Source of the DNA: Bugula neritina
Lineage: Eukaryota > Animalia > Bryozoa
Direction of reading: 5' to 3'
Assembly: GCA_964035545.1 (NCBI GenBank)
Contig: OZ037770.1
Coordinates: forward strand, 5,218,729-5,282,728
DNA length: 64,000 nt
Shown here: piece by piece, positions 42 through 37,720 of the stretch
Numbering within the stretch: the first letter of the stretch is position 1
How the letters are laid out: every line of letters starts with the position of its first letter
The notes under the pieces: model-generated
What the model was told of the DNA's origin: nothing
Seen by the model: the letters and a program-made list of their open reading frames with translations, nothing else
Databases searched by the model: none
Made by a program: the position numbers and the translations under genes

Positions 42-179
42 TCTATGTCAGCTGACTCAGTTAGATAAACTAGACATACGATTTAATCCTCTCAACACAG
101 TACCAGAAGTTGTGTCATCACTCACATCACTTAAAGAGTTGAATATGTGGAGCTGTAAAATATCTACTCTACCTGCGAG
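42..179 (+). CDS. 138-bp LRR exon (2 x 23-aa LRR), copy A1
   Basis: tattacag|TCTATG...GCGAG|gtttgt; LCQLTQLDKLDIRFNPLNTVPEVVSSLTSLKELNMWSCKISTLP. Confidence 0.9.
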
Positions 180-3100
180 GTTTGTGGAACACAGTCTTTC
201 TTGTTTCAAACACTCAATAATTCACATGTTGATATAATGCTTACCAAGTATTGCTAATTAGTATGTCACTATGTATTGATGAAAAGCATAAAGCAATAAA
301 TTACATATTTCTTGAGGCTACATGGTATTAGAGTTTTTGAGAACTTGAAAATGAATATGTTTCAGTTATCTGGCATTACATTTCCTATTGCTATAAATCT
401 TTTTCAACAAATATTATAGCACCCAATTGTACTTTACTATAGTGCGTATTTCTCATCAAATGGTTATTAGAGCCTTCTGTATTTTACTTTGAATATGTCT
501 TAGCGTAATAAATTTGCTATTTGGATATTTTATTTGATTGAGTATGCAGTGCATGTTATGATACAGTAGACTAGATATATCACATACTTTATATTACAGT
601 CTGTGTCAGCTGACTCAGTTAGAGAAACTAAACATAGGATCGAATCCTCTCTACACAGTATCAGAAGTTGTGTCATCACTCACCGCACTTAAAGAGTTGA
701 ATATGGACAGATGTAACTTATCTACTCTACCTGAGAGGTTTGTGTGCCACAACATATTTTATAACTAGTAGAGATCGACCGGTCCTGGACCACTTTTACC
801 CCCAGTGGCTCCCCACAACTAAGTTGTGGGTCTCCACTGGGGATAAAAGTAATCCAGGACCGGTCGATCTCTACTACTTATATATATACTTTTCCTTTCA
901 TTAACTTTTTTTTAAAAAAAGAGTGTTAAAAAACGACTTTTTTTAAATTTTTTTTAATGGTTTTTTTCAAACACTTTCCTTCTCTTTAACTTTTTTTAAA
1001 AAATAAGAGCGTATAAAAAAAAGTCGTTTTTTCAACCCTTACTTCCTCACTATTTTTTTAAATAATATTATATTTTACTATTGGTAAAAATAATAAATTA
1101 TTATACGCTAAGAATATAATAATTTAATACTAATAGTGTTTAATTAATACTATTATAGTAAAGTTTAAAATATACGTAATGAAAAGGTATCATGACAATA
1201 AGGGATATATTATTAGGAATATTAGTTAAAATTACGTTATCGGGTTTATGACTTTGATAATTGCTTGAAAGAGCTATTGTAAATGAAAAATTATTATTTG
1301 CATTAATAATTTTATTAATATTTATTTTACTATGCGGAACATTATGTTCGGCACCGCTAATAGTATAAAATAAATTTTCTTTAGATTCATCAAACGGATT
1401 TACGCTATTACGAATATGCAAACCTAATTTTTTATCGGTCCAATATAATATTTTATTTTTTTGGTTTGACATTTGTTCACCATAAAATTGTATTAATGCA
1501 TGCGTTATTTTTATAGGTTTATCTATTAAATAATCGTTAATTAAATCTACTGTAAAACTATTAATATTTTCGTAATAATAAAATTCATTAAAGTTTATAA
1601 AACCTGAAATAAACGCTTTATTAGTCGTTATATCGACTTTAATAAATTTATAGATATTCATTTATAATTATAATAAAGTTTTACTAATACGTAATGAAAA
1701 GGTAACGCTGCAGTGGTTATTTCGCTAGTCGGAGTGTCGGTTAAAATTACGTTACTCGGTTTATGACTAGGATAAGTTTTTGATAACGTTATTGATAGTG
1801 AAAAGTTTTTATTAGCTTCAATAATTTTATTAGCGTTTATTTCACTAAATGGAATATTGTGTTTGTTACCGCTTATATCATAAGAAGTAAGTTCACTAGC
1901 TCTACTAGGCATTTCACCACTATTTCGAACGGTTAAGCTTATTCTTTTATCAGTCCAATAAAGTTCTTTAGTACTGTGAGCTTGTTCACCGTAAAATTGT
2001 ATTAATATATTCGTTATTTCAATTGGTTCGTCAACTAAAAAATCTTTAATTAATTTTCCCGTAAAGCTATCAACATCTTCGTAATAATAAATTTCTGATG
2101 GAATTGCGATATTTATAATATAAGGTTTTTCATTTATTATCTTGGCTTTAGCCGCATTTCCAAAAATATAAACTGAACTCATTTATAATAGTAATTTATT
2201 TATAATTAATTGAGGCGTTTCGTGTGTAGACATTTCTTTAAGCCAATATAAACACAAGTGTCCGCGTATAACCGTACCGAATTCTTGCACTCGTTCCGTA
2301 TTATAAAATATTGGTGCCTTTAAATATTTCATTATTTCTAGAGGAGGATGTAGTCCAAAACTATCGAAATAATATTTTTTATTTTCGTTTTTATACCAAG
2401 CGACCCAATGAGTACCGTTACCCGTTAAATCGTCTAAATTTAATACGCCGCATTCTTTTTTACGTGGCTTATTGGGTAATTCGTTTCTAGAAAATACTCC
2501 TCTAAATTTAGGAATTTTTAATTCTTTAATCGCTTTATCGATATCAATATTCGTTAGCGCTTTCATTTATTATAACCGTAAGGAATCGTTGTTATTCCAT
2601 CTTCTAATATTATTCTTATATCGTCTTCGGCCGACAGAGCTACTTTGTTTATAGTCTCAGCGTACATCGTATGCTTATGACTTTTTAACACATTCATCGT
2701 TTTATGCTGATCTTGTCGCGTTAATAAACACTCTTTATAATCGTCAAACGTTATACGATTATCACGAAAAGTTTTATTAATTCCTTTACACTTTTTCTCT
2801 TCAATTCCATCCATTTTATACAAATATAACTTAGCTCTCAATCCAACAAACTCAGTAATTTGTTTACCACCGGCTTCGTCTTTAAACATACCTATTATTT
2901 TTTTATTTTTACCAGCTGGTAATTTATGATTCTTAGGATAATTACTCGTATCAAATTTAGTTTCAATGTCTGGCAATATATCTTCGTAAAAGTTATTGGT
3001 TTGTACGTGATACATTAAGCTATCCGTATCCGCAAAAAATAATTGCGCGTTCGCGTTATATTTTGGTTTAATATAACCGTAATGAAAATCATACATAAGA

Positions 3101-6100
3101 GTTTTACTAATATCCAAATTTGCTGCGCCTAAATATACGAGTTTATCAAATTTTAATTCCGTTACGTTCATATGAACGGCTACGAGATTTTCAGAAAATA
3201 TCGTATAACCTTTAAAATTAGGTTGATTCGTTAATTTTTTAGCTTCGCTTTCATTACTAACGAGTTTAACGTCGACTCGATTACGTATATTTTCCATCGT
3301 TTTACCAAACATTGAATTATTCATGAGCTTAAAGAAATCTTTTTTAAAATCGCTTCGAGCTAAAGTTCTTAGTTTAGTATTTAAGTTTATATATTCTTTA
3401 AGCTTATCGGATTCATTAAAGGTTATACCTCTATGAATTTTCGTCAGCTTTAAACCGTATTTAAGACATTGTTTTAACGCCTCGTAGTGTATAACGTAAT
3501 TCTTCTTATTATTTAAATTTGGAATTAGTTTTTCCACTTTATTAATCGTTAACCTTTCCGAACAAAACGGATAATCTTTATGCGAGTTGTGTAACTTTTT
3601 AGGATATTCTAAATCTACTTCTAAAAAGCTAGGTGGAAAATGTTCCAAGTCTTGACACTGTTCTTCGCTTAACCACTTAAAATTACCTATGGGTAACTTT
3701 TCAGACATAGCCCATCCGTATAAATTGTTAGCGTCCAAATACGTTATATAACTACTAGGCTCATTAGAGTTATAATTTTTCATATACTTATTATTAGCCT
3801 TAGCGTATCTATGACTAATCATACTTACACCGCCTCTAATTCCTCTTTCAAATAAAAGTAATTGATCAACGTCGGTAATAGGATCTAACTCTAATTTCGT
3901 AGTTTTAAGCATAGCGTCCCACGACAAGCCGGGAGCCGTATAATACCAAGCGGGATCTAATTTATAGTGTTCAAGACATACGCTTCTAAAGTTTTCAAAT
4001 ACGTCGGCTAATTGAATTACATCAACTTTCATATATAAGTCATGATATTCTCTAAACGTTTTTATATTAAACTCTCGCCAAACTTTGTGAGCGTGCTCAT
4101 AATCCTCGTCCGATATATCTTTTTCGGTTAAGCTCGAATAAAACTTTTCTTTAGGTGGTAAAGACGTTTCATTTAATACGCTTATGTTATTAAAATAATC
4201 GTAAGGAAATACTCCTTTTCTCAATAATGAGTCTAATTGTTTTTCCGCGTAATGCTTTTTTAAGTGTTTAAAGTCATCGCGTTTTATATTTGCGACTAAA
4301 CTCGCTAAACTAGAACTCATAAATTTAAATGTGTCTATAAACCTAAGTTCACGTTTAACTTCAATCTTTTTACCTTCTTTATTAGTAAATTTGTCTACTA
4401 CTACTCGTTCACTAAAAGATATATATTTTTCTTCAGTATTGGGTATACAAGAAATTTTACCGCTCAAGTTTTTAATAAACAAGTGAGCGTCGTAACCGGA
4501 CAAGTTATGAATAAATATTGGATAAAATTTTGGAATTTTATAATTTAAGTTGCAATTATTATGAGCCGCTCCTCGATAGTCTCCAGTTAAGTGACAGTGA
4601 TCTCTCACTCTATCGTCGCTTAATTCTTTTTCACATATATGACAAATTTCAGCTAACTCAAAAGACTCTTGCTCACTATCCGTAATTTTCATTCGTTTAG
4701 CAAATTTATGTTTTTTATACAAGTTTTTAATATCGAGTTCTAGTAATTGTATAAACAATTCATCAATATCTTCATCTTTGTATTGCTTAGTATAACTTCT
4801 GTATTTGCATTCGCCGGTAACGCTTACGATATAATATCCAAAACTCGACGGTTCGTGTTGTTGATATTGATTAGTATAGCTTTCTCGAGGATTAGGCCTA
4901 CAATTTTGTATAGGCTTAGTAAAGCATTCAAAGTCTGCGTATACCGCGAACGGTACTCTCATTTTATGACAATAATTTTTAAAATTAAATTTTATTTTAT
5001 TTTCAAGTTTTGGAAAGACCATAGCTACACCGTCGTTCGCTAAACACCATTTTTGATGTTTTTCTAAAGAATTTTCCGTTTTAAACGCTTGCGTACAATT
5101 TAAACAAAATTGTTTTGCGTGCCCGTCAATATTTATTTGCGAGCCGAGTAATTTACTCAAATTTTTAACGTACGTATAATGACTTTTTTCTTCATTAGTT
5201 ATAAGAAATAAAATTATTGTTTTAGAGCGTTTGGACGATTGTCTCCATGGATATACACGATTACCATTCCAAACGAAAACGGTAACGCTAATATTAGGAT
5301 TAACTTTTTCAAATGCATCAATAGATTTAGTTGTAGCTGGAAATTCTACACCTTCCCACGATACTTTATTAACGTGCTTTTTATAGTTAGATATTCTATC
5401 CGAATGGTTTTTAGCCGGATAAAGAGCGGCTAATACGGCCCACATAAAGCACTTGTTATCATTATTTTTTGGGTTTATTATAGCCTTTTTATCTTTAATT
5501 ATTTTAGGAAGATCAATATACGATGACCCTTTAAGAGGTTGATATTTACTAATATTAATTTCCATTTTTACAATTAATTTAAATATCTAATTACTTCCTT
5601 TAGCGTTAAACGAAGCTAAATTTTCTTTTATTTTTTCAACCATTACATTATATACTTCATTAATATTAGTAGACTCTAATATAGTTTCAATGCACGATGA
5701 AAATGCTGTAATTAATAATTCAGTTTTACCGGTATTTATATTAGTTTTTTCCATTTCACACGTTAATATTATTTTAATTTTTATAAGAGGTTTAAATAAC
5801 TTTAGTACACTTAATTTTACTAATTTAATAAACGAATCTATATCGTACTTGGGTAAACCCTTAATTTCATAAGTTTGAAACCAACCTTTAGCGGCATGTT
5901 CTTTAAGCTTAGGCTGATTATATAAAGCCATATTTTTTTCTTTAATTGGATTTACAATTTTTTTAATTGGCTTTATAATACCCTTAACCCATTTTTTTAT
6001 ATTACACGTAGTTTGCGTAAATATTTCTCGCATAATTTTTTTCACGGGTATGGGTATTAACGGGGCTTGCCTTATATTTGGAACGGGTTCGTCCATAATA

Positions 6101-9100
6101 TTTATAGGCATTAATAGCCGTATAAGTTCGGCTTTCTTTAATTGTGAATATCGCTTTAATCCTCTTTCTTTAGCTAATGCCTTTAAAATTTTGACAGTAG
6201 TTTTCTTATTGAACTCCATTTATATAGGAAAAAAATCTTTAAACTACATGACCTATTATTTGCTCAATTTTATGTTTTTTACGACGAGAATGTCCTTTTA
6301 TACCGTAATATTTAGCTATGGTTTTAAGATCATTAGACTTCATACAATGGTCAAATATTATATTCGGAGGTTCTATTAATTTTGCTAAATCTTCTTCCGT
6401 AAGTGTAATATATTGTTTTTGCTCGGCTCGAACTATTAACTCATCAATTATTTTATTTAATTCCATTTATATATAAAAAAATTTTAAACTATATATTAAA
6501 TGATAGCGAATAATTTTAGACAAGATAAAATTCAAGCGTTAAACGATGAAATACAAGAATTGGAAAATTATTATAAAAAAAAGTTAAAAAAATATAACGC
6601 TTTATTAACGGTTTTAAGAGTTTGCGTAAGTGCAAGCGGTGTAACTACGATTATATGCAGTACTGTTAGCGCAGCGTTATTAGGAACTGGTGTTGGTGCA
6701 ATAAGCGCAATTCCTATTAGTATAATAAGTGGAATAGCTGGAGTAATAACTACTAGTATTACATTGCAAGACGCTAAAATAATTAAAAAAATGCGATTAT
6801 ATTTAGATACTTATAAGTTTATAAAAGACTCTAAATTAGAAATTTGTAGTATGTTATCAAAAATTTTAAACGATGATTATATTGACGATAAAGAATATAA
6901 TTTTATAATTGAAAAATATAAAGGCATTAATACTATAATAGAAAATAAAATGCTTGAAATAATTAATACACAATGTTAATTAATTATATTTATAATTAAT
7001 TAAAATGGAGTTAAATAAGAATATTACGCGGGCTGATCGTATGCCGCTATTTATTATATAAAATTTTCTTAAACTATAATAGCATTCCTAAAAGAGGAAT
7101 ATTTTAAAACGGACTATTTGGACCTAAAATTAAACCTTTACCTTTTATATAGCTAGAACCTTGTTTTAAATATAAACCGTTACCTTTCATCAAATTAGAC
7201 GGTGCGACTGGTTTTAAAGTGATAGAACCGTTCGAATTAGGTTCTACGGAACATACGCACCCACCTTATTTCAAATAAAGACCTTTACCTTTAATAGCTC
7301 TTTCGACTCCGGTGATAGCGGCTCCGGAAAGCACACCCGGTATAATAGTTTTTAATATTGTAGGCAAAAATCTCGTAGCTATACCCAATAGAGGTCCTAA
7401 AAATCCTCCACTCATTGACGCATTAGTTTTTACTAACGATGGAGACATTTCGAGCGTTATATTTTTTTTATTCGCGTTTAATGCTATTAAAATATTATCA
7501 TTTTGCGTTTTCGTAATGGCTAGTTTATCATTTCCGCTTTCAAGAGGCAATTTAATAGTACAACCCTTGCCACTTCTATAAGCGTTCATTATTTTTTGTT
7601 TTTGCGCCTGTGGCACGTTTCCTGTAATTTCGCAATAACCCATTTATATAATACATTAAACTTCTCTCAAATGAAATCTTATTGAGAGTTGTTTGCCGCT
7701 AAGATCTAATAAATTACCTTTTTGATCAGTTACTGTAACGGTTAACGTCTTAATATATTTAACGTGAACGGGTAAGTATATTAAATTATGAGGTTTTTCT
7801 ATTATTTTATATCCCGGACTAACGCTCGGAAAAAATGAATAAATAACGGGTTTATAAGTACCATCGATATAACTTCCGTTAATACAATCAACTTGTACGT
7901 GTATAGCGTTTATATTTAAAATTTTTACTATGTTCGTAGCTTCGATATGAGGTTGATTGTATATTGTTGCATCAAAACCTAAAACGTCTCTTATAGAATT
8001 TTCAACGTTAAAATCTATTTGATAATTAAGTTTTAATTTAAGTATGATTCTAAAAGTTACTTTATTAGCTTTTAAAGTAATACCGTTTCTATTACCCCCC
8101 TCTTTTACTATTTCATCTTGAATAGCTTGTTCTAATTGATCTAATTCATACACTCCAATTGGTAACGAAACTAAATACCACGTAGTACCACCGTCTTTAG
8201 ACCATCTATAGGAATTTCTATCGGCACTAATGTTTGGAAAAAAATGAAACGTATCTAAACTAATAAGACACATTTCGTATTTTTTATTTTTATTTAATTC
8301 TATAGGCGGATTAAGTTGAGTAATTATTCTCGTTTTAGTATCGGTAACTCCTATAGTCATTGTTTGTTTAGAGGCCGTATTATCGGCAATTTCTCTTAAA
8401 ATTTTATTACCCATTTATATAACTTTTAAATTATTTCCATCGGAAGTGAGAGACATAGTTTTATCGGACAAAATTAATGCGTAAGCTTGAGTATTAGCTG
8501 GCACGTTTTGACTAAATTGAACTCTCAATTGAATATCGGCTACGCTATTTTTAAGAATCTCGCTTTGCTTACTAACGTCTATTACGAACAAAGCGTAAAG
8601 ATCTTTATATTCCGAAGGTAATACGTTTGAATAAGCAATTAGCTCGTTTATACTGTAATAATCTCCGCAAAATTTCGAAGCGTCTCCGTACACTCTACTA
8701 AACTTCATTTTAGCGAAATCTATGTCGTAGTCGACTTCAGGATATCGCTCGCTATTTAACATCGCGTATACGCTTTTAACGTTAACGTGATCAAATACGG
8801 CCGGATTAGTCGTTTGACTTTCAGTCTTATCCGTTTGAAAACCTACGATAATATACTTAGGTTTTTCCGTATCACCTCTAGAACTCAAACGCCATCTAAA
8901 GTTAGTAGTTTGCGGTACCGAAATACTATCACACCATCTAGATCTATATATCATTGGAAGTTGAGTTTTACTCTCTATAATCTTATAAAGCTTATTTTTC
9001 ATTTCAAAACTAGGAGTTATATGAGGCACCCACCACGACACTTTATTCAACGTTATTTTTCCCGCGTCTACGCCGTTAGCTCTATAAATAGCGTTATCGT

Positions 9101-15100: not shown

Positions 15101-18100
15101 CTATCTATAGAAGTTTCCTTTACTTCCCAAGTTCTTTTATAGTATTTCTTTATCTTTTTGAATATTTCCCATGATAGGTTGACTGGGCTGTTTTTTCAGA
15201 ATTTGTTTTAATAACTTTTTTCATTATATTATAACTATAGCTACTTCTGTACACATAATTGGTATATAATATTTTATTCTAGTAACACAGTTTGCTATCA
15301 CTGTCTAATCGAATGCACAAGTGCTATATACAGTACAAAATATTATCCTGATACAGTGGATTACATATATTATGCACTTTATATTACAGTCTATGTCAGC
15401 TGACTCAGTTAGAGAAACTAGACATAAAAGGAAATCCTCTCAACACATTACCAGAAGTTGTGTCATCACTCTCATCACTTAAGGAGTTGAATATGGAAAA
15501 CTGTAAATTTTCTACTCTACCTGAGAGGTTTGTGGAACACAGTCTTTCTTGTTTCGAACACTCAATAATTCACATGTTTTTATAATGCTTACCAAGTATT
15601 GTTAATTAGTATGTCACTATGTATTGTTGAAAAGTATAAAGCTATAAATTAAAATTTTCTTGGGGCTATATGATATTAGAGTTTCTGAACACTTGAAAAT
15701 AAATATGTTTCAGTTATTTGGCATTACATTTCCCAATGCTATAAAACCTTCTTCAACAAATACCATAGCATCCACTTGTAGTTTACTAGAACCTATTTCA
15801 CGTTAAATGCTTATTAGCTTTCGGTATTTTACTTCGAATTTGCTTTGTTGCAATAAGTTTGTTTCTTGGATATTTTACCTGATTGAATATACAAGTATAG
15901 TATACACAGTATATAATAATATCCTGATACAGTACTGGATTACATATAATATGCACTTTATATTACAGTCTAGGTCAGCTGACTCAGTTAGAGAAACTAC
16001 ACATAGGGTCGAATCCTCTCAAAACAGTACCAGAAGTTGTGTCATCACTCACATTACTTGAAGAGTTGAATGTGGGGAGATGTGAATTATCTAATTTACC
16101 TGAGAGGTTTGTGTGTCACTCCAAATTTTATATCATTTTTAACATTCAATAATTATTATTTTATAGCAGAATTTCAACACAGTAAATACTACATTAAGAT
16201 GTTTATACTTATTCTCTGCAAACCTCCATATGAATCTTACTGTTTCAGAGGATATTGTCAATTAGTCCACTATCTAGAAGTTTTCTCGACATCACGAATT
16301 ATTTCAACTTTCCCAACTTCACAAATAAATTTATAGTATTCCAATATTTTTTTTGAAATGCTTCCCATGATAGGTTGACTAGGCTTTTCTTCAGACATCG
16401 TTTTATCAACTCTTTTCATTATATTATAATGATAGCTACTTCTGTACACATAATTGGTATATATTATATTATTATAGTAACACAGTTTCTTATTATTGTC
16501 TAATAAGTAAGAAAACTACTTTCTTATATTTATAATGACATTACATTGCAACATACTTGACTCAATCAATCGTATTGTGTAAAGCTCATTAGTAAAAAGT
16601 TACTTAGTACGTTATATAGTATGTTTGATTTAGGTAATTCAAGTTCTACTTTTAATTATTTTGAAATAAAAGATCTGGCTTTATATTGTAAACCAAAAAG
16701 GACAAAAAAAATTATTAAATATTGCAACTTTTTTTTTCATGCGCTCCTTTGGTTATCTATCTCTAATTCTGAGTGTAATAGAATTAGCCATTTTTTATCC
16801 TATCCCTGTTCTCAAACAGCCTGTTAATATATTGTTTCATAGTTAATTTACAATTCTAAATTACGAATTAACTGGCCTTTAAAAGTGCAACATGTTCCTG
16901 CAAGCCGATGACTTTCCAGAATTTTATTCTCACATATAAGTGAAATAATTCACAACTTCTATTTTTTGTCTAGAAACTGTAATACATTTATTAGAATAAT
17001 TAATGAGAGGTTGTGGCAGAAGTATTTTACTTTACTTGAAATTACTTTAATGGCTTGCGTAGATGTTTCAGAGCCGTACCGTGTTCCTATTTGATAATAA
17101 ATTGCATGTAATATGGCACATAAAACAATAAGCCTTATAATTATAACATCCATATAGTAGAATATCAGTGTGAGTAGTTACTCAGTGATCAGAAGTGTCT
17201 GAAGTGTTTTATTTTCACTTCACATTACTTTAATGCATTATGCAGATGCCAAAAAGCTGTAGCCTCCCGTGTTCCTATTTGCTGATAACTGTGTTATGGC
17301 ACATGCTAGCAATTTTCTACTTTGTGGTATAAAATATTATTCCTTCTAGTAGAATACCAGTGTGAACAGTTACTCAGTTATCTGCCATATAAAAAAAGAT
17401 GATAGTATTATATGTAGGTTGTTTTTTATGACAGTACTAAGTACAAATGTAGCACTTTTCTTACCAAATATAAACTTACAATTATACTGTTATATTATCT
17501 TTATAAAATACTTAAAATTTTATACATCGTATATAATATGATACATAATTGTAACTTAGACACACTTGTTTTCTTTCCTTAATTAATTTACTAATTCAAG
17601 GTATTGTATATAAACTTGTTATAGTAACTGCAACTTAGTACTATATTACGTGTAATTATTGTTATACTAATTTTGGGTATCTTTATGAAAAGTATTATAT
17701 CAATTACCTGTATAGTTAGGTTTAATAATAGAAAAAATTATATATTATTAGAATACAGAGATTAAAGAAATTACAGAAACTCAACATTTCAGACAACAAA
17801 TTCACCAGTCTCCCATCTCCAGTGTGTGCATTGAGTAATCTGCACATACTGAATATATCCTACAACAGATCCATGACATCCTTGAGCCCGGAGATACTAC
17901 AGCTAACACATCTTGGATCCTTCTATACAGATGGATGCAATGCTCTTACATCTCCTCCACTAGAAGTTTTTAAAAGAGGACTGGATGCTGTGCGTCAATA
18001 CTACACAGACTTGGCTAAAGGTGCTGGTAGAAATCTTCCATTTGCGACAATAGTCATGCTGGGGAACACCATGGCAGGAAAAACCAGTCTAATTCGAACC

Positions 18101-21100
18101 TTACAGAGCACTGACAAGAAGAGAGTTTTAACTGACAGAGGTCCTAATGCAGAGTATGATGAAACCACAAAAGTGTTTATGGTGGAAGAGGTGGAGGTAA
18201 ATGGTACAACTCTTCGTTTCATAGATATGGGAGGCCAGGAGGTCTACCATATCACATACCATTTAACACTGAGACAGAATTGTGTACCAGTAATTGTAGT
18301 CAACATGGAGCAGTATGATCAGATATCGAAAATGTCTACAGACAGAGAGGCTGTGAGAAAGTTGGCTTTTGACTTTATGTCTCACCTCTATCTCGCCCAT
18401 CCAACTCTTGGTCCGCCTACCCTTGTCTTCACACACAAAGATAAGTTTTCGACTGAAATTTTCCAACAGCTTCGAAAAAAGTTTCTTGAAGTGTCTGAGC
18501 AGTTTTGCAAAAATATTCTTCGAGAAGAGAAAAGTTTAGAAGGTGACTTTGCGCGAATTCAACATTTCACTGAATCAAACGGAAAAGTGTTCTTCAACGA
18601 CAACATTTATGAAGTTGGGAAATTTGACGAGTACAAGATATTTGAAAAAATCAAGAAATATCTTCTTAAAAGTTGCCAACACTTTGTCAAGTCACTTCCA
18701 AAAGTTTGGGAGGATGTCAACAACAACATTCTGTCCTTGCAGACTTCACATAACACCTTTGATGAATTGTTGGCTGTGATAAACGGAAAGCAAGATAACA
18801 TTGAAGCAAAGCAATTGGATCTGATTATCATGTACATGCATGATTGTGGCAAAGTTCTCTGGTATAAACATATTGATGCACTCAGGCCATACATATTTCA
18901 CAAGATCACGGAAATAACCAAGCTACTCTGTGTCTTGTATCATCATGATCCAGATATCTGGCAAAGTAGAGTGGATCAGTTCAAGCCATATTGCTGCAAA
19001 GAAGGAGTGAGGATAGAAAAACAAGATTTTGGAGAGTTTGTGAATTCTTTTAGAATCAACGGCTTGATGACAAAATCTCTTCTCGAATATTTGATCAGAA
19101 AAGAAACTTCGTTCACTGGTGATAATGATGTCAAAATTGCTGTTTGCTTGCTCAGAACATTCCGTTTGTTGTATGGCCCTTTGAATAATGATTCTGAAGA
19201 GTCTTACTTCATAATCCCTCAGTTTGCCAAAGAATCCTACAGCCTCTCTTACACTCCACCAAAGGAGCTGATGCTTCATACCGACACGCAGTTTAATGGT
19301 CTGGCCTTACCGCAGCATGTCTACCATCAGATGACGGTTGGTTTGCTGGAACTATTTGCTGATGATTCTGCCACAATACAGGTAAAGAAGAATGGAGCCA
19401 ATGTCTATCAAGATAGAATATACACACAGCTGATACATGACTATGAATCTAGGAGAGTTTTGCTCTACACATCATCTGATGCAAGTAATATCACCAAAGC
19501 ATGGCAAAAACTCATTTCAGTCAACAACAACATCCTCAGACATGTTATGGAAACTTGGACTGCTAGTCGCCCAGTCACTGCCTGCATCTGTGCTCACTGC
19601 CTACTGCTAGGTGTTCCATGCCCTAAAAAGTATTTTCATCCTAAATGGTGTTTCCGCTCCTTGAAAAAAAATTTACCTGTTGTCAAGAAGTGCAGCGGAT
19701 CTTCAACAATCTTGTGCAATAATGAGGAGATCCCAAGAGCTCTGATTTTCCCATGTATGTATCATTAGTAGTGTTTATTACTATGTTTTTATAAATCGAA
19801 ACCTTTGCTTACTACAAATTCCAAACAAAACCTGTTAATTTTTTTTTAAATTTGAAAATATTTAAACCAAAGCCATTATGTCCTGCGTAGATTAGTAACA
19901 TTCTCATAGTGGTTATTTCACAACTTATATCTTAGCTACCCAATATATAAATTGGTTCCAGTATACATAATATGTAAGCTAGTTATAGTACATGTAAACT
20001 GGTTACAGTATGCATCTTATGTAAGCTGGTTACAGTATATGTACGTTGGTTACAGTATACATAATATGTAAGCCCGTCATACTATATATGTAAGCTGCAC
20101 TGTGTTATTTAGGTGAGGCTTTGTCTGAGACAGAAACTGATGAAATGGTGAAGCTATTAACTCAACTTAAACTTTGTAGACAGCAGAATGATGCAACCAA
20201 AATTAGTATATCTTTATCATACTTACTTTATCAACCTTCACTGTTATTAGCAAATTCAGATATCTCAATACATGCAGCACTTTGTTTACTCTGACTAGAA
20301 GCAAATGTAAAAAAACTGATTTTTTTTGGTCAAGCGATCAGAAAAATGGTAACTTTGCAATTTTTCTAATTTTCAAATCCTGGTATTAGCCAATCAAATC
20401 ATGTGACTGCAGATGATGATGGTGATCTGAGTGATCTCTCTGAAGATGATGACAATCTGTATCCTGATGAAGAGAACGAAGAAAACGTGAAGTTTATCCA
20501 ACCCAACCTAAAGACTACCAGAAACCTGAGGATTAAGAATCTTTTCTCAAATGCTAAACAGGTTGGTGTCCCAGATTAGGGTCATAATTCCTGCCATTAA
20601 AGCATATGTTCACCTTATTCATTAGATTCATATGTTCATATCGTATAACCTATTCTTAGGCAGAACATTATAAACACATGCACCTGTAGGAAAATGACAC
20701 TATTTACTATTAGCTCTATTATTAGGCCATGTCTGCCTCAAACATGTTTAACTAGACGTACAAATATGTTAACTATTACTATCATTCATTACAGTGTTTA
20801 GTATGCTATTCTAAGTCTATTTGTATCCAGGTGTTCAGTATGACCAGAAAGAGGGGAAAAGCTCTGATAATAAACAACAAGAACTTTGTTGAAAGACCAG
20901 ACTTATGCAGGGAAGGTTCAGATGCTGATGTTGAGAATATGGCTGTCATGTTGAGATTTCTCAAGTTTGATGTTGAGACACACACAGACCTGACAGCAGA
21001 GGTATGATATTATTGTTAGACTGAAAGCAACAGTATTCAAGCGTAGTAGCCTATAGCCTTCAGTTTATTGAAATGAAACTTGACACTTGTTTTGTCAAAC

Positions 21101-22799
21101 CTTAAAAATTGAAGCAATCATATGTGACTATTATTTCAGTTTATCCATATCAAAAATAAGGAGTGTATAGAACACCCAAAAGAAGTTTTCTGCTGGTCAC
21201 AATTTTGTTTTATTTTTTGCACATTTTGAAATAATTATTTCATTCAATTATCATAACTTTGTATCAGATATTAAACATAGTTATTTTCAAATTTGCAGGA
21301 AATGCTGTCTGCTGTGAAGTCTGAGATAAGAAGAGAGAAAAACAATGACTTGGGTTGTCAAATACTGGTTATTATGACTCATGGTGGAGAAGATAACTGT
21401 ATATATGGAACTGACCTTGAAAAGGTCAACCTTACAGACCTGTATGATTTGCTCGCTCCTTTGAGTCTGAAGCCTAAACCTACAGTTGTCATCCTAGAAG
21501 CTTGCAGTGGAGGTAATCACCCGTTGAGTAAATAACAGTATTTGTCTCGTTTAGTTGATTAGTTTCAGTAGCAAAGATATCTCTCTGACTCAGCCATTAA
21601 AATTGTATTTATTTCCTGTTTTCTCTTAATTTAAATTATTATATAAATCCCAATATTTCTGTTGCAGCAAACATTGAGGTGAATCCAGACAGATCAGGTC
21701 TTGCAGCAGCTCAAGAAGAAGAAACCGAAACTGTCTCTTCTACACATTCTGAATCTGATGATGATATTGTATATCCTGAAACGCCTATTGTAATAAGACC
21801 CATCAGACCTGTCTCACCACAAGCACCTAGAATAGAAGAGCGTTGGACCAGACTAGATGTTGATAATCTTCTTGTTCTAAAGAGTAACGTCTGCTGTAAG
21901 TGTATACTAAATAGTGATTGGCTAGTTTTACGTGTGCACAATCGCAGTTATTCAGGATGTTGTCTCTCCTTGATCCAATCTTTTAGACTTGTTTTCAAAA
22001 AGGTATAACTAAACACTGCTCAGAATCAAAACTGAACAAAATTTTAAAATATACTGAGCTTGCTCTGATTACATCATGCTTTTGGCTGCATTTAATCTTA
22101 TTATAGCATCAAAAAGACATCCTGATTATGGATCTCCTATGATTAGAGCTCTAGTATCTTCAATCTACAAACATGCCTGTCACCGTGATCTCTACACTAT
22201 CTTTCAACAAGTGAGTGAAGAACTACAATATTGTTTGCTATTTTAACTTTTATACAAGAAAGTATTACTGATTGTAGCATCTCTTTCATTTCCATGTTCA
22301 AACCATTATGTCATTTGAAAGAAACAATTTAGGCGTTTCTTAGTATAAAAGAGTGTCATTCAGTGCTTTACTTGTTTGAATTGTAGAGTTTAGTCTCTGT
22401 TGTTACAGTTTCTTTAGAGTAATGGCTCAGTACTATATTGATAGTTTCTCTCCTCCTTTAATATGTTCTTGTAGTCTGCTAATAACTAGTCTCGTTTATT
22501 AAATGACATGACTGTAGCGGACAACTCTAAAGTTTTACTACTCAGAGGTGTTAAAGTAGGATAAAATGATCTAACAGCCGGGAGTTGTACCTTATCACAG
22601 CTAGTAGCGAATTGATTAACAGTCTTACAAGTTATTACTTACTTTACAGGTAAGGACTAAACTAGTGAAGAAACTTTATGCAGATGAAGATTCAGAGAGA
22701 AGCAGAAATTTGGTTGTAATCTGGAATACTCTTCCTCTCCGTAAAAGACTTTACCTGTTTCCAGGCTTTGATGGATTTGGTGAAGAGGCCAAATCTTAA
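42..22799 (+). CDS. Spliced host gene, 5'-partial: LRR - Roc GTPase - COR - caspase (p20/p10) fusion protein
   Basis: Exons with GT-AG borders and consistent phases: 42-179, 600-737, 15390-15527, 15969-16106 (LRR), 17752-19754 (LRR+Roc+COR), 20113-20205, 20413-20561, 20831-21001, 21299-21512, 21668-21895, 22107-22210, 22650-22799 (TAA). Roc motifs GNTMAGKTS, DMGGQEVY, THKD. Caspase motifs RGKALIINN, REGSDAD, THG, EACSG, SKRHPDYGSPMI, KRLYLFPG. Confidence 0.82.
600..737 (+). CDS. 138-bp LRR exon, copy B1
   Basis: Same splice context; LCQLTQLEKLNIGSNPLYTVSEVVSSLTALKELNMDRCNLSTLPE. Confidence 0.9.
764..1143 (+). repeat. Left terminal inverted repeat; first 115 bp (764-878) is an imperfect palindrome
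   Basis: Reverse complement of 14575-14953 with a few mismatches. Confidence 0.95.
1140..1661 (-). CDS. Polinton uncharacterised 173-aa protein, paralog 1
   Basis: ORF with clear similarity to 1658-2182 (LIQFYGEQ, LYWTDK, SHKP, PFHYV). Confidence 0.8.
   Translation of the reverse strand: MNIYKFIKVDITTNKAFISGFINFNEFYYYENINSFTVDLINDYLIDKPIKITHALIQFYGEQMSNQKNKILYWTDKKLGLHIRNSVNPFDESKENLFYTISGAEHNVPHSKININKIINANNNFSFTIALSSNYQSHKPDNVILTNIPNNISLIVMIPFHYVYFKLYYNSIN
1658..2182 (-). CDS. Polinton uncharacterised 174-aa protein, paralog 2
   Basis: Tandem paralog; ATGA overlap with the downstream ORF. Confidence 0.8.
   Translation of the reverse strand: MSSVYIFGNAAKAKIINEKPYIINIAIPSEIYYYEDVDSFTGKLIKDFLVDEPIEITNILIQFYGEQAHSTKELYWTDKRISLTVRNSGEMPSRASELTSYDISGNKHNIPFSEINANKIIEANKNFSLSITLSKTYPSHKPSNVILTDTPTSEITTAALPFHYVLVKLYYNYK
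2183..2566 (-). CDS. Adenain/Ulp1-like maturation cysteine protease, probably inactivated
   Basis: GTHWVA (His), YFDSFG (Asp), Q-x6-RGH where the catalytic CG is expected (codon CGC rather than TGC, 2264-2266). Confidence 0.88.
   Translation of the reverse strand: MKALTNIDIDKAIKELKIPKFRGVFSRNELPNKPRKKECGVLNLDDLTGNGTHWVAWYKNENKKYYFDSFGLHPPLEIMKYLKAPIFYNTERVQEFGTVIRGHLCLYWLKEMSTHETPQLIINKLLL
2563..6219 (-). pseudogene. Protein-primed family B DNA polymerase (~1218 codons) interrupted by one in-frame TAG
   Basis: ORFs 5587-6219 and 2563-5565 are in frame: GSN*IFKLIVKMEINISKYQPLKGSSYIDLP, with W expected at the stop. OTU-like DNKCFMWAV...HY, Zn finger, exonuclease YADFE / HNLSGYD, polymerase YLDANNLYG, KLMNNSMFGK, DTDS. 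Confidence 0.93.
6239..6466 (-). CDS. Small basic protein with Rho-N/HeH-like motif
   Basis: DLKTIAKYYGIKGHSRRKK resembles the PolB N-terminus ILKALAKERGLKRYSQLKKAELI; TAAATG start. Confidence 0.6.
   Translation of the reverse strand: MELNKIIDELIVRAEQKQYITLTEEDLAKLIEPPNIIFDHCMKSNDLKTIAKYYGIKGHSRRKKHKIEQIIGHVV
6500..6979 (+). CDS. Polinton membrane protein (coiled coil plus hydrophobic hairpin)
   Basis: 159-aa ORF; long hydrophobic, Gly/Ser-rich segment at about aa 35-88; TAAATG start. Confidence 0.7.
   Translation: MIANNFRQDKIQALNDEIQELENYYKKKLKKYNALLTVLRVCVSASGVTTIICSTVSAALLGTGVGAISAIPISIISGIAGVITTSITLQDAKIIKKMRLYLDTYKFIKDSKLEICSMLSKILNDDYIDDKEYNFIIEKYKGINTIIENKMLEIINTQC
7074..7643 (-). 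pseudogene. Virion core/membrane-active precursor-like protein with two in-frame stops
   Basis: Frame continues past TAA at 7266-7268 and 7104-7106 to ...GKGLILGPNSPF*NIPLLGMLL; adenain-type sites MSGG/F, IKGK/G (x2), MKGN/G. Confidence 0.7.
7656..8414 (-). CDS. Minor capsid protein (penton, single jelly roll)
   Basis: Follows the MCP; Polinton mCP-like motifs FPNI, LPIGVYE, YSFFPSVSPGYKIIEKP, YLPV, TDQKG.LLDL.G. Confidence 0.82.
   Translation of the reverse strand: MGNKILREIADNTASKQTMTIGVTDTKTRIITQLNPPIELNKNKKYEMCLISLDTFHFFPNISADRNSYRWSKDGGTTWYLVSLPIGVYELDQLEQAIQDEIVKEGGNRNGITLKANKVTFRIILKLKLNYQIDFNVENSIRDVLGFDATIYNQPHIEATNIVKILNINAIHVQVDCINGSYIDGTYKPVIYSFFPSVSPGYKIIEKPHNLIYLPVHVKYIKTLTVTVTDQKGNLLDLSGKQLSIRFHLREV
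8415..9689 (-). CDS. Major capsid protein (double jelly roll)
   Basis: 424 aa; PSKSYLIIEG, NNGMAYLF..IRYQLDG, KPKYIIVGFQT, LNSERYP, LFVIDVSKQ recognised as typical of Polinton MCP. Confidence 0.88.
   Translation of the reverse strand: MDSLNITQKIVTDTSVERDQVHEYEPVTGTNLNYPGEIRIVINQQDLYVQPSKSYLIIEGRLTKNDGTAYADADLVTLINNGMAYLFKSIRYQLDGHDLEYINNPGHASTMMGLLTYPDDYGKSRGLNQLWSKDTTAAAAAANLGFAARQVYLIQKPDPKGTFSIKVDFRHLFGFANDYEKVLYGIKHQLTLVRDTDDNAIYRANGVDAGKITLNKVSWWVPHITPSFEMKNKLYKIIESKTQLPMIYRSRWCDSISVPQTTNFRWRLSSRGDTEKPKYIIVGFQTDKTESQTTNPAVFDHVNVKSVYAMLNSERYPEVDYDIDFAKMKFSRVYGDASKFCGDYYSINELIAYSNVLPSEYKDLYALFVIDVSKQSEILKNSVADIQLRVQFSQNVPANTQAYALILSDKTMSLTSDGNNLKVI
9711..10034 (-). CDS. Basic core-like protein with protease-site motifs
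   Basis: K/R-rich; YAGG/GIF followed by an amphipathic helix; LKGS/G near the C-terminus. Confidence 0.7.
   Translation of the reverse strand: MYVYNKRQRLQRHYAGGGIFDTIKNVVTKIASNSSVKELGKKAITKAGTAAGEKIVNAIKRRRQKNLNAKSQAILQKLNQTKNILKVLNNNNNISNILKGSGQAIAY
10038..10843 (-). pseudogene. Conserved Polinton protein (C-terminal DPNALVERLELL..AGNT..NEI motif), disrupted
   Basis: ATG at 10843 (MSYLKINDP), TGA at 10778-10780, frameshift in the A-run near 10300, final TAA at 10038-10040; the ORF track shows only the middle piece 10205-10720. Confidence 0.75.
10858..11100. repeat. Internal tandem array of ~31-bp units with GTGTCC...GGACAC dyad
   Basis: ACATTTGTGTC(C/T)ACTTTTTATGGACACG(G/A)AC repeated, with shorter variants at both ends. 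Confidence 0.9.
11099..12472 (-). CDS. Zn-finger + parvovirus-type PLA2 + retroviral-type DDE integrase + chromodomain fusion
   Basis: CxxC..CxxC; HNFLGPG and DAIATRHDVCY (PLA2); WAADLVDM, VDKGKEF, VERWNRT (DDE); LVKWLGYPESQNLWV (chromodomain). Confidence 0.92.
   Translation of the reverse strand: MYCCKCKTKTKTLNYEKRVSKNNRLMGYGNCGQCGCKKTTFVGSGLANNLINNLPFELHYPGHNFLGPGTKLNKRLNDDMTPKEESKPVDRDDAIATRHDVCYALNKDTKTRNEICDKNMLNELKAISNPTPAEQRHSRFASTIIGAKKRLGWGLKNWTDELAEELHKPVQKKFRKRRVWVSGIDNIWAADLVDMTEFAKFNNGYKYLLTVIDVFSKYGWIIPLKNKTGKATALALKTILTRRKPQHLWVDKGKEFYNKNVKSLIDLYSTENEEKSSVVERWNRTMKERMFKYFSANNTYKYIDVLKDLVKRYNETKHSSIGMTPIEASNPSNENKVRMKLYPNLPAPSKPKFAVGDRVRIPRKKRTFEKGYTVRWTEEVFIISKILYTNPTTYKLIDSGGEEIQGSFYEQELQKTSQEIYRIERVIKKKGKKALVKWLGYPESQNLWVDLNILERL
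12485..13246 (+). CDS. A32/FtsK-like genome packaging ATPase
   Basis: Walker A GKSRCGKT, Walker B LIIFDD, RGRH motif, YLSQ. Confidence 0.92.
   Translation: MEIENLSWKNEINRNNNPLLPKSIRGLIVGKSRCGKTTLLCNLLLQPNWLDYDKLMIYGKSLSQPEYINMKKAFELGLTKEEILNFFKNSETIVNSGINVNRFLKNYAKGNGNINAKFIESSDDVYDPSELDASNKNLIIFDDLMLEKQKTCESYYVRGRHNNVDCFYLSQNYFKLPRNTIRENANFICLFPQDGKNLNHIYQDHVTGDITLNEFKNFCYKGWQKPHGFITLDLSSSKNNGRYRHGLDEFYIP
13250..13681 (+). pseudogene. Third paralog of the 1140-2182 family; start lost (ATA) and frameshifted
   Basis: Begins like (M)SVYKFG; downstream frame LYWKDKNLTLII...NYTSRKPNDITV...LPF aligns by eye with LYWTDKKLGLHI...NYQSHKPDNVIL...IPF. Confidence 0.7.
13682..14578 (+). CDS. Fibre/spike-like protein with 40-aa repeats
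   Basis: LDMGGNKI...PADDQDAATKKHVD fibre/adhesin neck-like motif, then five full and one partial ~40-aa (120-bp) repeats. Confidence 0.7.
   Translation: MSVYKFGVSGKTQIDTKKFVLINGSSTLTGTLDMGGNKISRVINPADDQDAATKKHVDDTSMPKIQNPINQLTISTNDGRVIDSDLKVDDVITKTNVSNYPVPLIQNPINQLTISTDAGHVIDSNLKINDVITKNKVSNYAVPLIQNPTEKLTVSTNTGNIIDSNLSVSDVVTTSNINNLAIPKIQPANEKLTVSTTSGNVADSSLSVSDIITTSNISNFAMNKIQPSIGGKLLMLSSDGNIVETGINITDIITINNISGYAIPKLQNAIGNKLVISTSDGDIIESTESQPTFPSYSI
14575..14953 (-). repeat. Right terminal inverted repeat; last 115 bp (14839-14953) palindromic
   Basis: Reverse complement of 764-1143. Confidence 0.95.
15390..15527 (+). CDS. 138-bp LRR exon, copy A2
   Basis: LCQLTQLEKLDIKGNPLNTLPEVVSSLSSLKELNMENCKFSTLPE; the following intron resembles 180-599. 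Confidence 0.9.
15969..16106 (+). CDS. 138-bp LRR exon, copy B2
   Basis: LGQLTQLEKLHIGSNPLKTVPEVVSSLTLLEELNVGRCELSNLPE; the following intron resembles the Polinton-interrupted intron. Confidence 0.9.
17752..19754 (+). CDS. Large exon: terminal LRRs, Roc GTPase and COR domain
   Basis: Contains ORF 17822-19768; SPPLEV..RG..AVRQY pre-Roc motif, P-loop at 18062-18088, DMGGQ, THKD, MHDCGKVLWY. Confidence 0.9.
20831..22799 (+). CDS. Caspase catalytic domain exons
   Basis: Five in-phase exons; His at 21380-21382 (THG) and Cys at 21503-21505 (EACSG); acidic intersubunit linker; C-terminal LYLFPG. Confidence 0.88.
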
Positions 22800-23963
22800 C
22801 TCAATACATGACTCTATTTTTAATTTGCACAACACTTAGTTTAATTATGACTCAAATTACGTGACTATTAAACCTAAACAGATAGTGAGTTTGTGTGAAT
22901 GGGTAATGATTACTTGACAGTCAAAATATCTATCAAATATTTTTTAACTTTTGTATTTTATTTTGAGTATAAAGCTATATACTGATAACATTTACTTTGG
23001 TAAATTAGCTTGTGATGTCATTTCATAACAAATATTCATATTATATGATATTAGCTGTACTGCCATATTACGGAAATGATATAATCAGTTCATTTGTGAT
23101 TTTGTATGTTCTGCCTATATATATTACTATATTATAGTATTTAGTATAATATGGTTGCAGTTGGTTTTATGTCTTGTAAAACATTAACCATTCCCGCTTA
23201 TATGGTTTTTACTTAGCCAAATTTGTTCTCATTTATATTTTCATGTGACACTTAGCACTGACTATGTTGTTTCATCCACATGTTCTAACTGCTATGCTAA
23301 CATTATTATCATAATTTCAGTCCCTTGCTAATATCTATCAAAGATTGCTCTTTACATATTATCAATAAACTTTATTGAAATGATTTATATAAAAAATTTC
23401 AATTGCTTTTAAGATTTCAAGTCTGGAAAATTTTACTTCAATAATCTGTGATTAAAGTAACGAGTACATTATTTACAAATAATAGTTATGAAATTCGTCA
23501 TTCTCGTACCTGCATCTGCAAACCAATCATTTCTCAAATAAGCTAATGAAATGATAGGGTGGGGCTCATTACTCTGTGAAATTCTGATCTCAAACCTCCG
23601 CTGCCTTGCAGCAATACCCACCAAAGAAAAAGCTTGGGGGTTAAACCCCGATAATAAATCAGGATTTGGAGCCCTGAAGGCATTTCGTAGTCAATCAAAA
23701 CTTTGTTCTGGCAGCTTCTGCGACGACGCTGGTGCCCAAATGTAGCAGCTCTGTTTCCCTTTTAGAGCTGCCAGCGATATCACTAAAGAAAACACTCCAT
23801 CTTCACCTTTTATGTAGACACTGGGAGCAGCAGATACTAGTTATAAGCTGTCTCTCAATTGGTGTAGAGCAAAGCATCAGGGATTTCTCTCGACATTGGG
23901 AGAAATCTTTAGATTTCACTGGGCAGCTACCGCTCAATTGAACAGCAGACTGAACTCTTTGCA

Positions 23964-26709: not shown

Positions 26710-37720
<11,011 letters not shown>

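What the first reader, a model, noticed from the sequence alone, without database searches (positions are those of the whole stretch)
42..22799. Single-chain LRR-Roc-COR-caspase: candidate ROCO-based immune sensor with a built-in protease effector
Seen: the Roc-COR exon (17752-19754) joins via two small exons (20113-20205, 20413-20561) to a complete caspase with every intron phase matching (1,1,0,0,1,1,0), no stops, and intact His/Cys and P-loop. Known: animal ROCO proteins (LRRK1/2, MFHAS1, DAPK1) carry kinase or death domains; COR mediates dimerisation; initiator caspases are activated by induced proximity, normally via separate NLR/Apaf-1 platforms. Inference: ligand binding by the LRRs and GTP-dependent Roc-COR dimerisation could directly switch on the fused caspase, i.e. 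a one-protein inflammasome/apoptosome analog. I do not recall this architecture described in animals.
Basis: partly seen in the sequence, partly recalled or inferred. Interest (0 to 1): 0.9.

Follow-up and report, generated by a model that had tools for sequence, protein, structure and literature searches.

The report
ROCO receptor with built-in caspase protease
This is a real, apparently intact gene of a bryozoan (moss animal) that joins a variable binding surface, a LRRK2-type GTP switch and a cell-death protease in one protein; dozens of relatives sit mislabelled in bryozoan and amphioxus genomes, and none seems to have been tested.

Summary
The exons, phases (1,1,0,0,1,1,0), open frames, P-loop and His/Cys dyad are as reported. 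The fusion is well supported without transcripts. The splice donor ending the Roc-COR exon sits at the same codon in 10 distinct homologous loci. A Watersipora subatra RefSeq protein has the same eight-exon Roc-COR-linker-caspase layout, and it folds confidently into LRR-Roc-COR plus caspase. The gene belongs to an expanded bryozoan family (13 Watersipora models with a full caspase). Its LRR exons vary mostly at exposed strand positions, while Roc-COR is under purifying selection: an immune-receptor signature.

The architecture is not new to animals. Amphioxus has at least 11 such database proteins, 'LRRs-caspase' hybrids were proposed as direct sensors in 2008, an annelid ROC-caspase was noted in 2024, and bacterial LRR-Roc-COR-caspases in 2021. 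I found no characterisation of any, and no description of the bryozoan family.

Two corrections. In the best-studied Roco, GTP favours the monomer, so 'GTP-dependent dimerisation' is probably backwards. The caspase has Glu where Gln normally binds substrate Asp, so its specificity may differ. A 14.2-kb Maverick sits in intron 2, and the gene's 5' end lies outside the window.

The parts
42..179 (+). LRR exon 1 (two 23-aa repeats, phase 2-2); starts at a splice acceptor, so the gene continues upstream of the window
   Evidence: (LRR_4 E=6e-7)
600..737 (+). LRR exon 2
764..14953 (.). Maverick/Polinton (adintovirus-like) insertion in intron 2: about 380-bp terminal inverted repeats (98%), 6-bp target duplication TTTATA (758-763 and 14954-14959); not part of the protein
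15390..15527 (+). LRR exon 3 (exons 1-2 and 3-4 with their introns are a tandem duplication; introns 83-85% identical)
15969..16106 (+). LRR exon 4 (corrected start 15969)
17752..19754 (+). Last LRRs + Roc (G1 18062-18085, G2 DETT, G3 DMGG 18224, G4 THKD about 18431) + COR-A/COR-B with invariant CxHC...C...C (19589-19600 onward); ends at a conserved phase-1 donor
20113..20205 (+). Linker exon, 30 aa; its Watersipora counterpart is one long helix in the model (phase 1-1)
   Evidence: 84-93-nt counterparts in five loci
20413..20561 (+). Acidic flexible linker exon preceding the caspase (phase 1-0)
20831..21001 (+). Caspase large subunit, first exon; S1 Arg (RxGS motif) present
21299..21512 (+). 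Caspase large subunit with catalytic His (21380) and Cys (21503); Glu at 21497 in place of the usual Gln
21668..21895 (+). Acidic inter-subunit linker (Asp cluster SESDDD, candidate processing sites) and start of the small subunit
22107..22210 (+). Caspase small subunit exon with the second S1 Arg (SKR)
22650..22799 (+). Last caspase exon (LYLFPG), stop at 22797-22799; ATTAAA at 22867

Best explanation
One gene of an expanded bryozoan family of cytosolic sensor-effector ROCO proteins. SHOWN from sequence and comparison: LRR array, then Roc GTPase, COR, a helix, an acidic linker and a two-subunit caspase, in one reading frame; intact G1-G4 and His/Cys; purifying selection on Roc-COR and caspase; exon-by-exon duplication of LRR units with variation concentrated on the exposed strand. 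INFERRED: the LRRs bind a non-self or damage ligand. Binding shifts the Roc nucleotide state; by analogy with C. tepidum Roco, the GTP-loaded monomer is 'off' and hydrolysis or nucleotide release gives the COR-B dimer. COR dimerisation brings two tethered caspase domains together, as a death-fold prodomain plus platform does for initiator caspases. The caspase then cleaves its acidic linkers and downstream substrates, giving cell death or inflammation-type signalling without an adaptor. The Glu-for-Gln change suggests that this sub-lineage has a shifted P1 preference.
For: Donor T^GT[AG][AT]GT at the same codon ending the Roc-COR exon in 10 distinct loci of 29-89% identity, with unspliced read-through of only 2-78 unrelated residues. 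Linker exons of matching size and phase in five loci; the procedure recovers the RefSeq-annotated exon in Watersipora. XP_067932893.1 has the same eight exons from Roc-COR to the stop. Caspase exons follow the Roc-COR exon in L001, L002, L003/4, L005, L006, L009 and L010. 13 Watersipora models carry a full caspase and 2 a partial one. The Watersipora model has pLDDT 83.8; its best PDB matches are C. tepidum LRR-Roc-COR (4e-23), LRRK1/2 and caspases. No AATAAA/ATTAAA lies between 19768 and 20112; ATTAAA follows the last exon. dN/dS is 0.11-0.22 for Roc-COR, while dN>dS in 5 of 6 LRR exon pairs. Variable sites: 15/30 at exposed LRR positions against 18/105 elsewhere, p=5e-4. The COR C-terminal half mediates Roco dimers (PMC6337361). 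In amphioxus the same C-terminal slot holds caspase, GT4 glycosyltransferase, OTU or Death domains, like bacterial counter-invader ROCOs (PMC8195603).
Against: No transcript, protein or activity data. No dimer was modelled, and no structure was obtained for this copy (single-sequence model pLDDT 34). The S1 pocket is non-canonical: Glu for Gln in the window and three paralogs, and the second S1 Arg is Ile in two paralogs. The LRR selection test rests on four 45-codon, non-independent exons; the excess over intron divergence holds for exons 1 vs 3 (p=0.008) but not 2 vs 4 (p=1.0). Roco dimers need not be the active state (the LRRK1 dimer is autoinhibited; own knowledge). A 14-kb insertion lies 20 nt from the exon-2 donor, and the 5' end is unseen.
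Confidence: 0.55

Rival explanations
1. The fusion is real, but in this sub-lineage the caspase is not a classical Asp-specific death protease: it has a changed specificity (a dedicated substrate) or acts as a low-activity scaffold, like cFLIP or paracaspase.
For: E[AVT]CSG in the window, L003, L005 and L006; HACSG in L002; second S1 Arg replaced by Ile in L003 and L006; small-subunit motif GS[PL]MI instead of GSWFI.
Against: His, Cys and the first S1 Arg are kept in all of them, and the window keeps the second Arg too. Caspase exons have dN much lower than dS. Watersipora members mostly keep QACSG.
Confidence: 0.2
2. The family is not a pathogen sensor but a metabolic or developmental switch, for example a GTP-level or stress sensor that triggers programmed tissue regression such as the bryozoan polypide degeneration cycle (own knowledge).
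For: Roco proteins have been proposed to act as GTP sensors (PMC6337361). Brown algal ROCOs respond to several stresses (PMC11378527). No ligand is known.
Against: Dozens of paralogs, LRR exon duplication and variation on exposed positions are not expected of a housekeeping switch.
Confidence: 0.1
3. The family is functional, but this copy is silenced or truncated (birth-and-death copy; Maverick insertion; missing 5' exons).
For: 14.2-kb element with 98% identical terminal repeats close to the exon-2 donor. No start exon in the window. Truncated models occur among Watersipora paralogs.
Against: No stop or frameshift in about 1220 codons, all splice sites canonical, dN/dS 0.22 against the nearest relative.
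Confidence: 0.1
4. Two neighbouring genes: an LRR-Roc-COR ending at the unspliced stop (19768) and a separately initiated caspase.
For: In-frame Met codons exist in exons 20113 and 20831. Six Watersipora models lack a caspase.
Against: Conserved donor and non-conserved read-through in 10 loci. Conserved phase-matched linker exons. No poly(A) signal in the intron. One caspase-less model (XP_067935480.1) has caspase exons directly downstream, which RefSeq assigned to an overlapping model.
Confidence: 0.05

Closest known systems
Watersipora subatra RefSeq models labelled 'MFHAS1 homolog' or 'uncharacterized' (e.g. XP_067932893.1)
   Same: Same architecture, same eight exons and phases from Roc-COR to the stop, same bryozoan Roc-COR clade (support 100).
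   Different: 30-37% identity; mostly QACSG rather than EACSG; automatic annotations only, no description found in the paper library.
Amphioxus LRR-Roc-COR-caspases (UniProt C3XQ16 and at least 10 others); the 'LRRs-caspase' hybrids of Zhang et al. 2008 (PMC2575513)
   Same: Same domain order with intact P-loop and QACRG; the same idea of a direct link from recognition to apoptosis was proposed.
   Different: About 22% identity in Roc-COR. In the one gene examined, LRRs and Roc-COR share one exon. Caspase swaps with GT4, OTU or Death among close paralogs. A separate origin is favoured by the trees but not proven (AU p=0.11). The passages read do not mention Roc-COR, and I could not match their model numbers (figure not held).
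Owenia fusiformis caspase with a ROC prodomain (PMC11463336)
   Same: Roc plus caspase in a lophotrochozoan.
   Different: Single gene noted in passing, placed in the caspase-Y group; LRR/COR not mentioned in the passages read; sequence not compared here.
Bacterial LRR-AP-GTPase(Roc)-COR-effector counter-invader proteins (PMC8195603)
   Same: Variable LRRs, Roc-COR and a C-terminal effector slot; caspase is among at least 24 effectors; multi-paralog deployment.
   Different: Prokaryotic. The window's caspase matches metazoan caspases exon by exon and shares introns with the amphioxus gene, so it looks like an animal caspase grafted on; function is predicted in both.
Brown algal LRR-ROC-COR genes (PMC11378527)
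   Same: Expanded ROCOs with phase-2 LRR exons and diversifying LRRs, proposed immune receptors.
   Different: 72-nt single-repeat exons rather than 138-141-nt double-repeat exons; no caspase (a minor group has a different peptidase, IPR009003).
NLR inflammasomes / Apaf-1 apoptosome (own knowledge)
   Same: Works-like analogy: repeat sensor, nucleotide switch, proximity-induced caspase activation.
   Different: The switch is a Roc GTPase, not a STAND ATPase; the caspase is in the same chain; no death-fold adaptor; a dimer rather than a ring is expected.
Human ROCOs LRRK1/2, MFHAS1, DAPK1
   Same: Roc-COR core, and LRRs in LRRK and MFHAS1.
   Different: No kinase, WD40 or death domain here; a caspase occupies the position after COR. 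MFHAS1 has no C-terminal enzyme (own knowledge).

Membership tests
ROCO proteins | Roc GTPase domain with G1-G4 motifs | tested here: met
   Pfam Roc above cut-off; 59 of 62 family members hit Roc; G1 GNTMAGKT, G2 DETT, G3 DMGG, G4 THKD.
ROCO proteins | COR domain directly after Roc | tested here: met
   COR-A E=1e-4 in the window (below cut-off); COR-A in 45 and COR-B in 10 of 62 members; the homolog's model matches 6HLU and 3DPU Roc-COR.
ROCO proteins | G5 motif | tested here: inconclusive
   No clear consensus recognised in the alignment.
ROCO proteins | GTP binding/hydrolysis and COR-mediated dimer cycle | not testable with these tools
   Only monomer prediction is available.
Caspases (peptidase C14A) | Caspase fold with large and small subunit and cleavable linker | tested here: met
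   Pfam C14 in three exons; PDB caspase hits exon by exon; homolog model TM about 0.8-0.86 to solved caspases with a disordered linker.
Caspases (peptidase C14A) | His-Cys catalytic dyad | tested here: met
   MTHG at 21380 and ACSG at 21503 align with the caspase dyad.
Caspases (peptidase C14A) | Asp-binding S1 pocket (Arg179, Gln283, Arg341; caspase-1 numbering from own knowledge) | tested here: inconclusive
   Both Arg present; Gln replaced by Glu in the window and three paralogs.
Caspases (peptidase C14A) | Cleavage after Asp | not testable with these tools
   Needs an assay.
Classical initiator caspases | CARD or DED prodomain | tested here: not met
   No death-fold hit in any exon scanned or in full-length homologs; the N-terminus of this copy is outside the window.
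NLR / STAND receptors | NACHT or NB-ARC ATPase | tested here: not met
   The P-loop domain is Roc; only 1 of 62 members gave a marginal NACHT hit.
MFHAS1 orthologs (database label of the homologs) | Orthology to vertebrate MFHAS1 | not tested
   No vertebrate MFHAS1 in the trees. The bryozoan clade has a long stem and is separate from Lingula, Ptychodera and amphioxus 'MFHAS1 homologs'.
LRRK / DAPK | Protein kinase domain | tested here: not met
   No kinase hit in the exons or in seven full-length homologs.
Maverick/Polinton (intronic element) | TIRs, 6-bp TSD, integrase, packaging ATPase, double-jelly-roll capsid | tested here: met
Maverick/Polinton (intronic element) | Protein-primed family B polymerase | tested here: inconclusive
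   The 1000-aa ORF 2563-5565 shows PolB-like motifs by eye but gave no Pfam PolB or PDB hit.

The most novel reading that the evidence does not exclude
Bryozoans have built a large receptor repertoire of adaptor-free, GTPase-gated caspases. LRR exons are duplicated and diversified for recognition, a Roc-COR monomer-dimer cycle directly gates the protease, and sub-lineages have altered P1 specificity. Amphioxus, an annelid and bacteria would have reached the same design separately, making ROCOs a further class of nucleotide-switched immune receptors beside NLRs, with proteolysis as a direct read-out of the Roco cycle.
Probability: 0.35. Interest if true: 0.88.

Novelty: new variant of a known kind. 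Interest (0 to 1): 0.62.

Why it matters
It would extend the bacterial 'LRR-Roc-COR plus swappable effector' defence design to an expanded animal receptor family, in a phylum whose immunity is barely described. It also makes a contested question directly testable: which nucleotide and oligomeric state of Roc-COR is the active one (central to LRRK2 biology). A caspase that needs dimerisation is a natural reporter of that cycle. The family is hidden in databases under 'MFHAS1 homolog' or 'SHOC-2' labels.

Tried and rejected
Every search used single exons by reference, or full-length database proteins (P0041, P0192) as stand-ins.

A single-sequence fold of the Roc-COR exon was uninformative (pLDDT 34). 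The first metagenome scan found nothing; the second gave 12 short contigs, and I found no spliced transcript among those compared; L021 (weak match) was left out. Look-up of the window's BRCA2 ORF found no record, so the species is not established. The nearest relatives are JGI contigs labelled AY690838 (Bugula neritina mitogenome accession, from memory) at 89% aa / 91% nt, and a B. neritina model (KAF6026298.1) joins COR to a caspase fragment.

A full IQ-TREE run timed out; FastTree and quick trees were used instead. A test of a single origin for bryozoan plus amphioxus Roc-COR was not rejected (p=0.11), and the caspase tree is unresolved with five outgroups. Huang et al. 2008 was not held. 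Eight literature searches (seven on the gene or its hosts) gave no paper on bryozoan ROCO-caspases; the library lacks most subscription papers.

Rejected: bacterial origin of the contig (spliceosomal introns, BRCA2, metazoan caspase); chance adjacency; NLR membership. The intronic viral element was only described.

Full report
OBSERVATION. The window is AT-rich, intron-rich animal DNA. Reading each exon separately gives twelve coding exons on the + strand: four 138-nt phase-2 LRR exons (42, 600, 15390, 15969), a 2003-nt exon with the last LRRs and Roc-COR (17752-19754), two linker exons (20113-20205, 20413-20561) and five caspase exons (20831-21001, 21299-21512, 21668-21895, 22107-22210, 22650-22799). 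Pfam by exon gives LRR, Roc (2e-7), COR-A (1e-4) and Peptidase_C14 in three exons. Exon 42 begins at an acceptor, so the N-terminus is outside the window.

IS THE FUSION REAL? No transcript was available, but four comparative lines agree. (i) In 10 distinct homologous loci of 29-89% identity the Roc-COR exon ends at the same codon with a phase-1 donor, whereas unspliced read-through runs 2-78 residues with no conservation. The stop at 19768 is therefore intronic in character, and no poly(A) hexamer lies in that intron. (ii) Both linker exons have counterparts of matching size and phase in five loci, and the same procedure recovers the RefSeq exon in Watersipora. (iii) W. subatra XP_067932893.1 maps to its genome as the same eight exons from Roc-COR to the stop. 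(iv) Caspase exons follow the Roc-COR exon in seven distinct loci. An alignment-based model of the Watersipora protein (pLDDT 83.8) shows LRR, Roc, COR, a long helix from the first linker exon, a disordered acidic stretch and a caspase with a disordered inter-subunit linker. Its best PDB matches are C. tepidum LRR-Roc-COR, LRRK1/2 and caspases. I put the fusion itself at about 0.93.

FAMILY. The Roc-COR exon finds about 30 JGI protein clusters at 41-89% identity; the five checked come from samples labelled AY690838, which I recall as Bugula neritina. W. subatra has 13 models with a full caspase, 2 partial and 6 without; one of the six has caspase exons directly downstream that RefSeq gave to an overlapping model. 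The host is thus most likely a bryozoan close to Bugula (inference). Roc-COR is under purifying selection (dN/dS 0.11-0.22), as are the two caspase exons tested, whereas dN exceeds dS in 5 of 6 LRR exon pairs. Variable nucleotide sites cluster at the exposed strand positions of the LRR motif (15/30 against 18/105, p=5e-4). Against intron divergence the excess holds for exons 1 vs 3 (p=0.008) but not 2 vs 4, so this is suggestive rather than proven. The C-terminal end of COR carries invariant Cys/His residues, possibly a zinc site (inference).

ACTIVE SITES. G1-G4 of Roc are intact. The caspase has His and Cys in register and both S1 arginines, but Glu replaces the Gln before the catalytic Cys in the window and in three paralogs, and two paralogs also replace the second Arg by Ile. 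Watersipora and amphioxus members mostly keep QACSG/QACRG. Asp specificity cannot be assumed for this sub-lineage.

MECHANISM. Initiator caspases are switched on by dimerisation (established knowledge); here COR takes the place of the death-fold prodomain and platform. The C-terminal half of COR forms the Roco dimer, and C. tepidum Roco is mainly monomeric with GTP, dimeric when nucleotide-free and intermediate with GDP (PMC6337361). The most economical model is: GTP-loaded monomer off; ligand binding at the variable LRR face promotes hydrolysis or nucleotide loss; COR dimer; caspase dimer; autoprocessing in the Asp-rich linkers; downstream cleavage. The architecture and sequence signatures are shown; every step of activation is inferred (0.55). 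Rivals: altered-specificity or scaffold caspase (0.2), non-immune metabolic or developmental switch (0.1), inactive copy (0.1), two genes (0.05).

WHAT IS KNOWN. The architecture is present in amphioxus: C3XQ16 has LRR, Roc, COR-A, COR-B and C14 above Pfam cut-offs, and at least ten more proteins from several Branchiostoma species and hybrids share it, while close paralogs carry GT4, OTU or Death domains in the same slot. Zhang et al. [quoted passage not shown] A ROC-prodomain caspase was noted in the annelid Owenia (PMC11463336). Bacterial LRR-AP-GTPase-COR proteins with caspase among at least 24 effectors were described as predicted counter-invader systems (PMC8195603). Brown algal ROCOs show phase-2 LRR exon shuffling (PMC11378527). 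Bryozoan and amphioxus Roc-COR domains form separate clades, with a hemichordate caspase-less ROCO sister to amphioxus. Their LRR exon layouts differ, and amphioxus fused caspases are no closer to bryozoan ones than to unrelated caspases. Separate fusions are favoured, but a single origin is not rejected (AU p=0.11). I found no paper on the bryozoan family and no experiment on any ROCO-caspase in the library searched.

SURROUNDINGS. Intron 2 holds a 14,190-bp Maverick/Polinton (764-14953) with 98% identical terminal repeats and an exact 6-bp target duplication, encoding integrase, packaging ATPase and capsid proteins; the duplicated intron 4 shows the empty site. It inflates the gene span but does not interrupt coding sequence.

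VERDICT. Real, intact as far as seen, and a member of an unrecognised bryozoan expansion. It is a ROCO by tested criteria and a caspase by fold and dyad; it works like an inflammasome or apoptosome only by inference and is not an NLR. The architecture has been glimpsed before in animals and bacteria but never characterised, so: new variant of a known kind, interest 0.62.

Noticed in passing
window:764-14953: Maverick/Polinton (adintovirus-like) endogenous element in intron 2, recent by its 98% identical TIRs. ORFs: integrase with PLA2-like and chromo domains (11099-12472), A32-type ATPase (12485-13246), double-jelly-roll capsid (8415-9689), probable penton, PolB-like ORF (2563-5565), a 120-nt-repeat ORF (13682-14578), and 31-nt tandem repeats at 10911-11100. 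Described only; intactness not assessed.
   Followed up: partly
window:1140-1661 and 1658-2182: Two tandem paralogous ORFs (173 and 174 aa, 74-81% nt identity in parts) at the left end of the Maverick; not scanned.
   Followed up: no
L022:1-57303 (W. subatra OY755161.1): RefSeq model XP_067935480.1 (no caspase) lies inside a caspase-bearing model that takes its Roc-COR exon from more than 45 kb upstream, and one open LRR exon (35355-35495) is skipped. Either mis-assembly of tandem paralog models, or alternative sensor modules spliced to shared caspase exons.
   Followed up: partly
proteins P0237-P0268 (Branchiostoma): Amphioxus ROCOs whose COR regions are 55-67% identical to the caspase-bearing ones (about 40% for P0258-P0268) carry GT4 glycosyltransferase, OTU, Death or pentraxin domains instead: effector swapping as in bacterial ROCO defence proteins.
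   Followed up: partly
proteins P0270, P0271, P0273: Unassigned metagenome proteins combining a pannexin-like/LRRC8-type domain (PF12534), LRRs and a caspase: another possible sensor-caspase fusion.
   Followed up: no
protein P0269 cluster: Ankyrin-repeat caspase; one member is annotated from the tick Haemaphysalis longicornis.
   Followed up: no
window:19589-19756: Invariant CxHC...C...C at the end of COR across 62 family members; the last Cys codon is split by the conserved intron. Possible zinc site.
   Followed up: partly
window:54830-57622 and following exons to about 60879: BRCA2 ortholog; large exon with nine BRC repeats, some in a 171-nt tandem duplication (56608-57060).
   Followed up: partly
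window:32655-34142: Non-LTR retrotransposon reverse transcriptase ORF, followed by an 867-nt (AC)n array at 34340-35206.
   Followed up: partly
window:37424-37771 (-) and 41055-41336 (-): Exons resembling proline dehydrogenase and a Brix-domain (RPF1-like) protein, by eye only.
   Followed up: no
window:42806-42982, 60180-60344, 62958-63106: A repeat of about 150 nt shared with introns of the Bugula-sample loci L003, L004 and L006 (73-87% identity), supporting close kinship of the host.
   Followed up: partly
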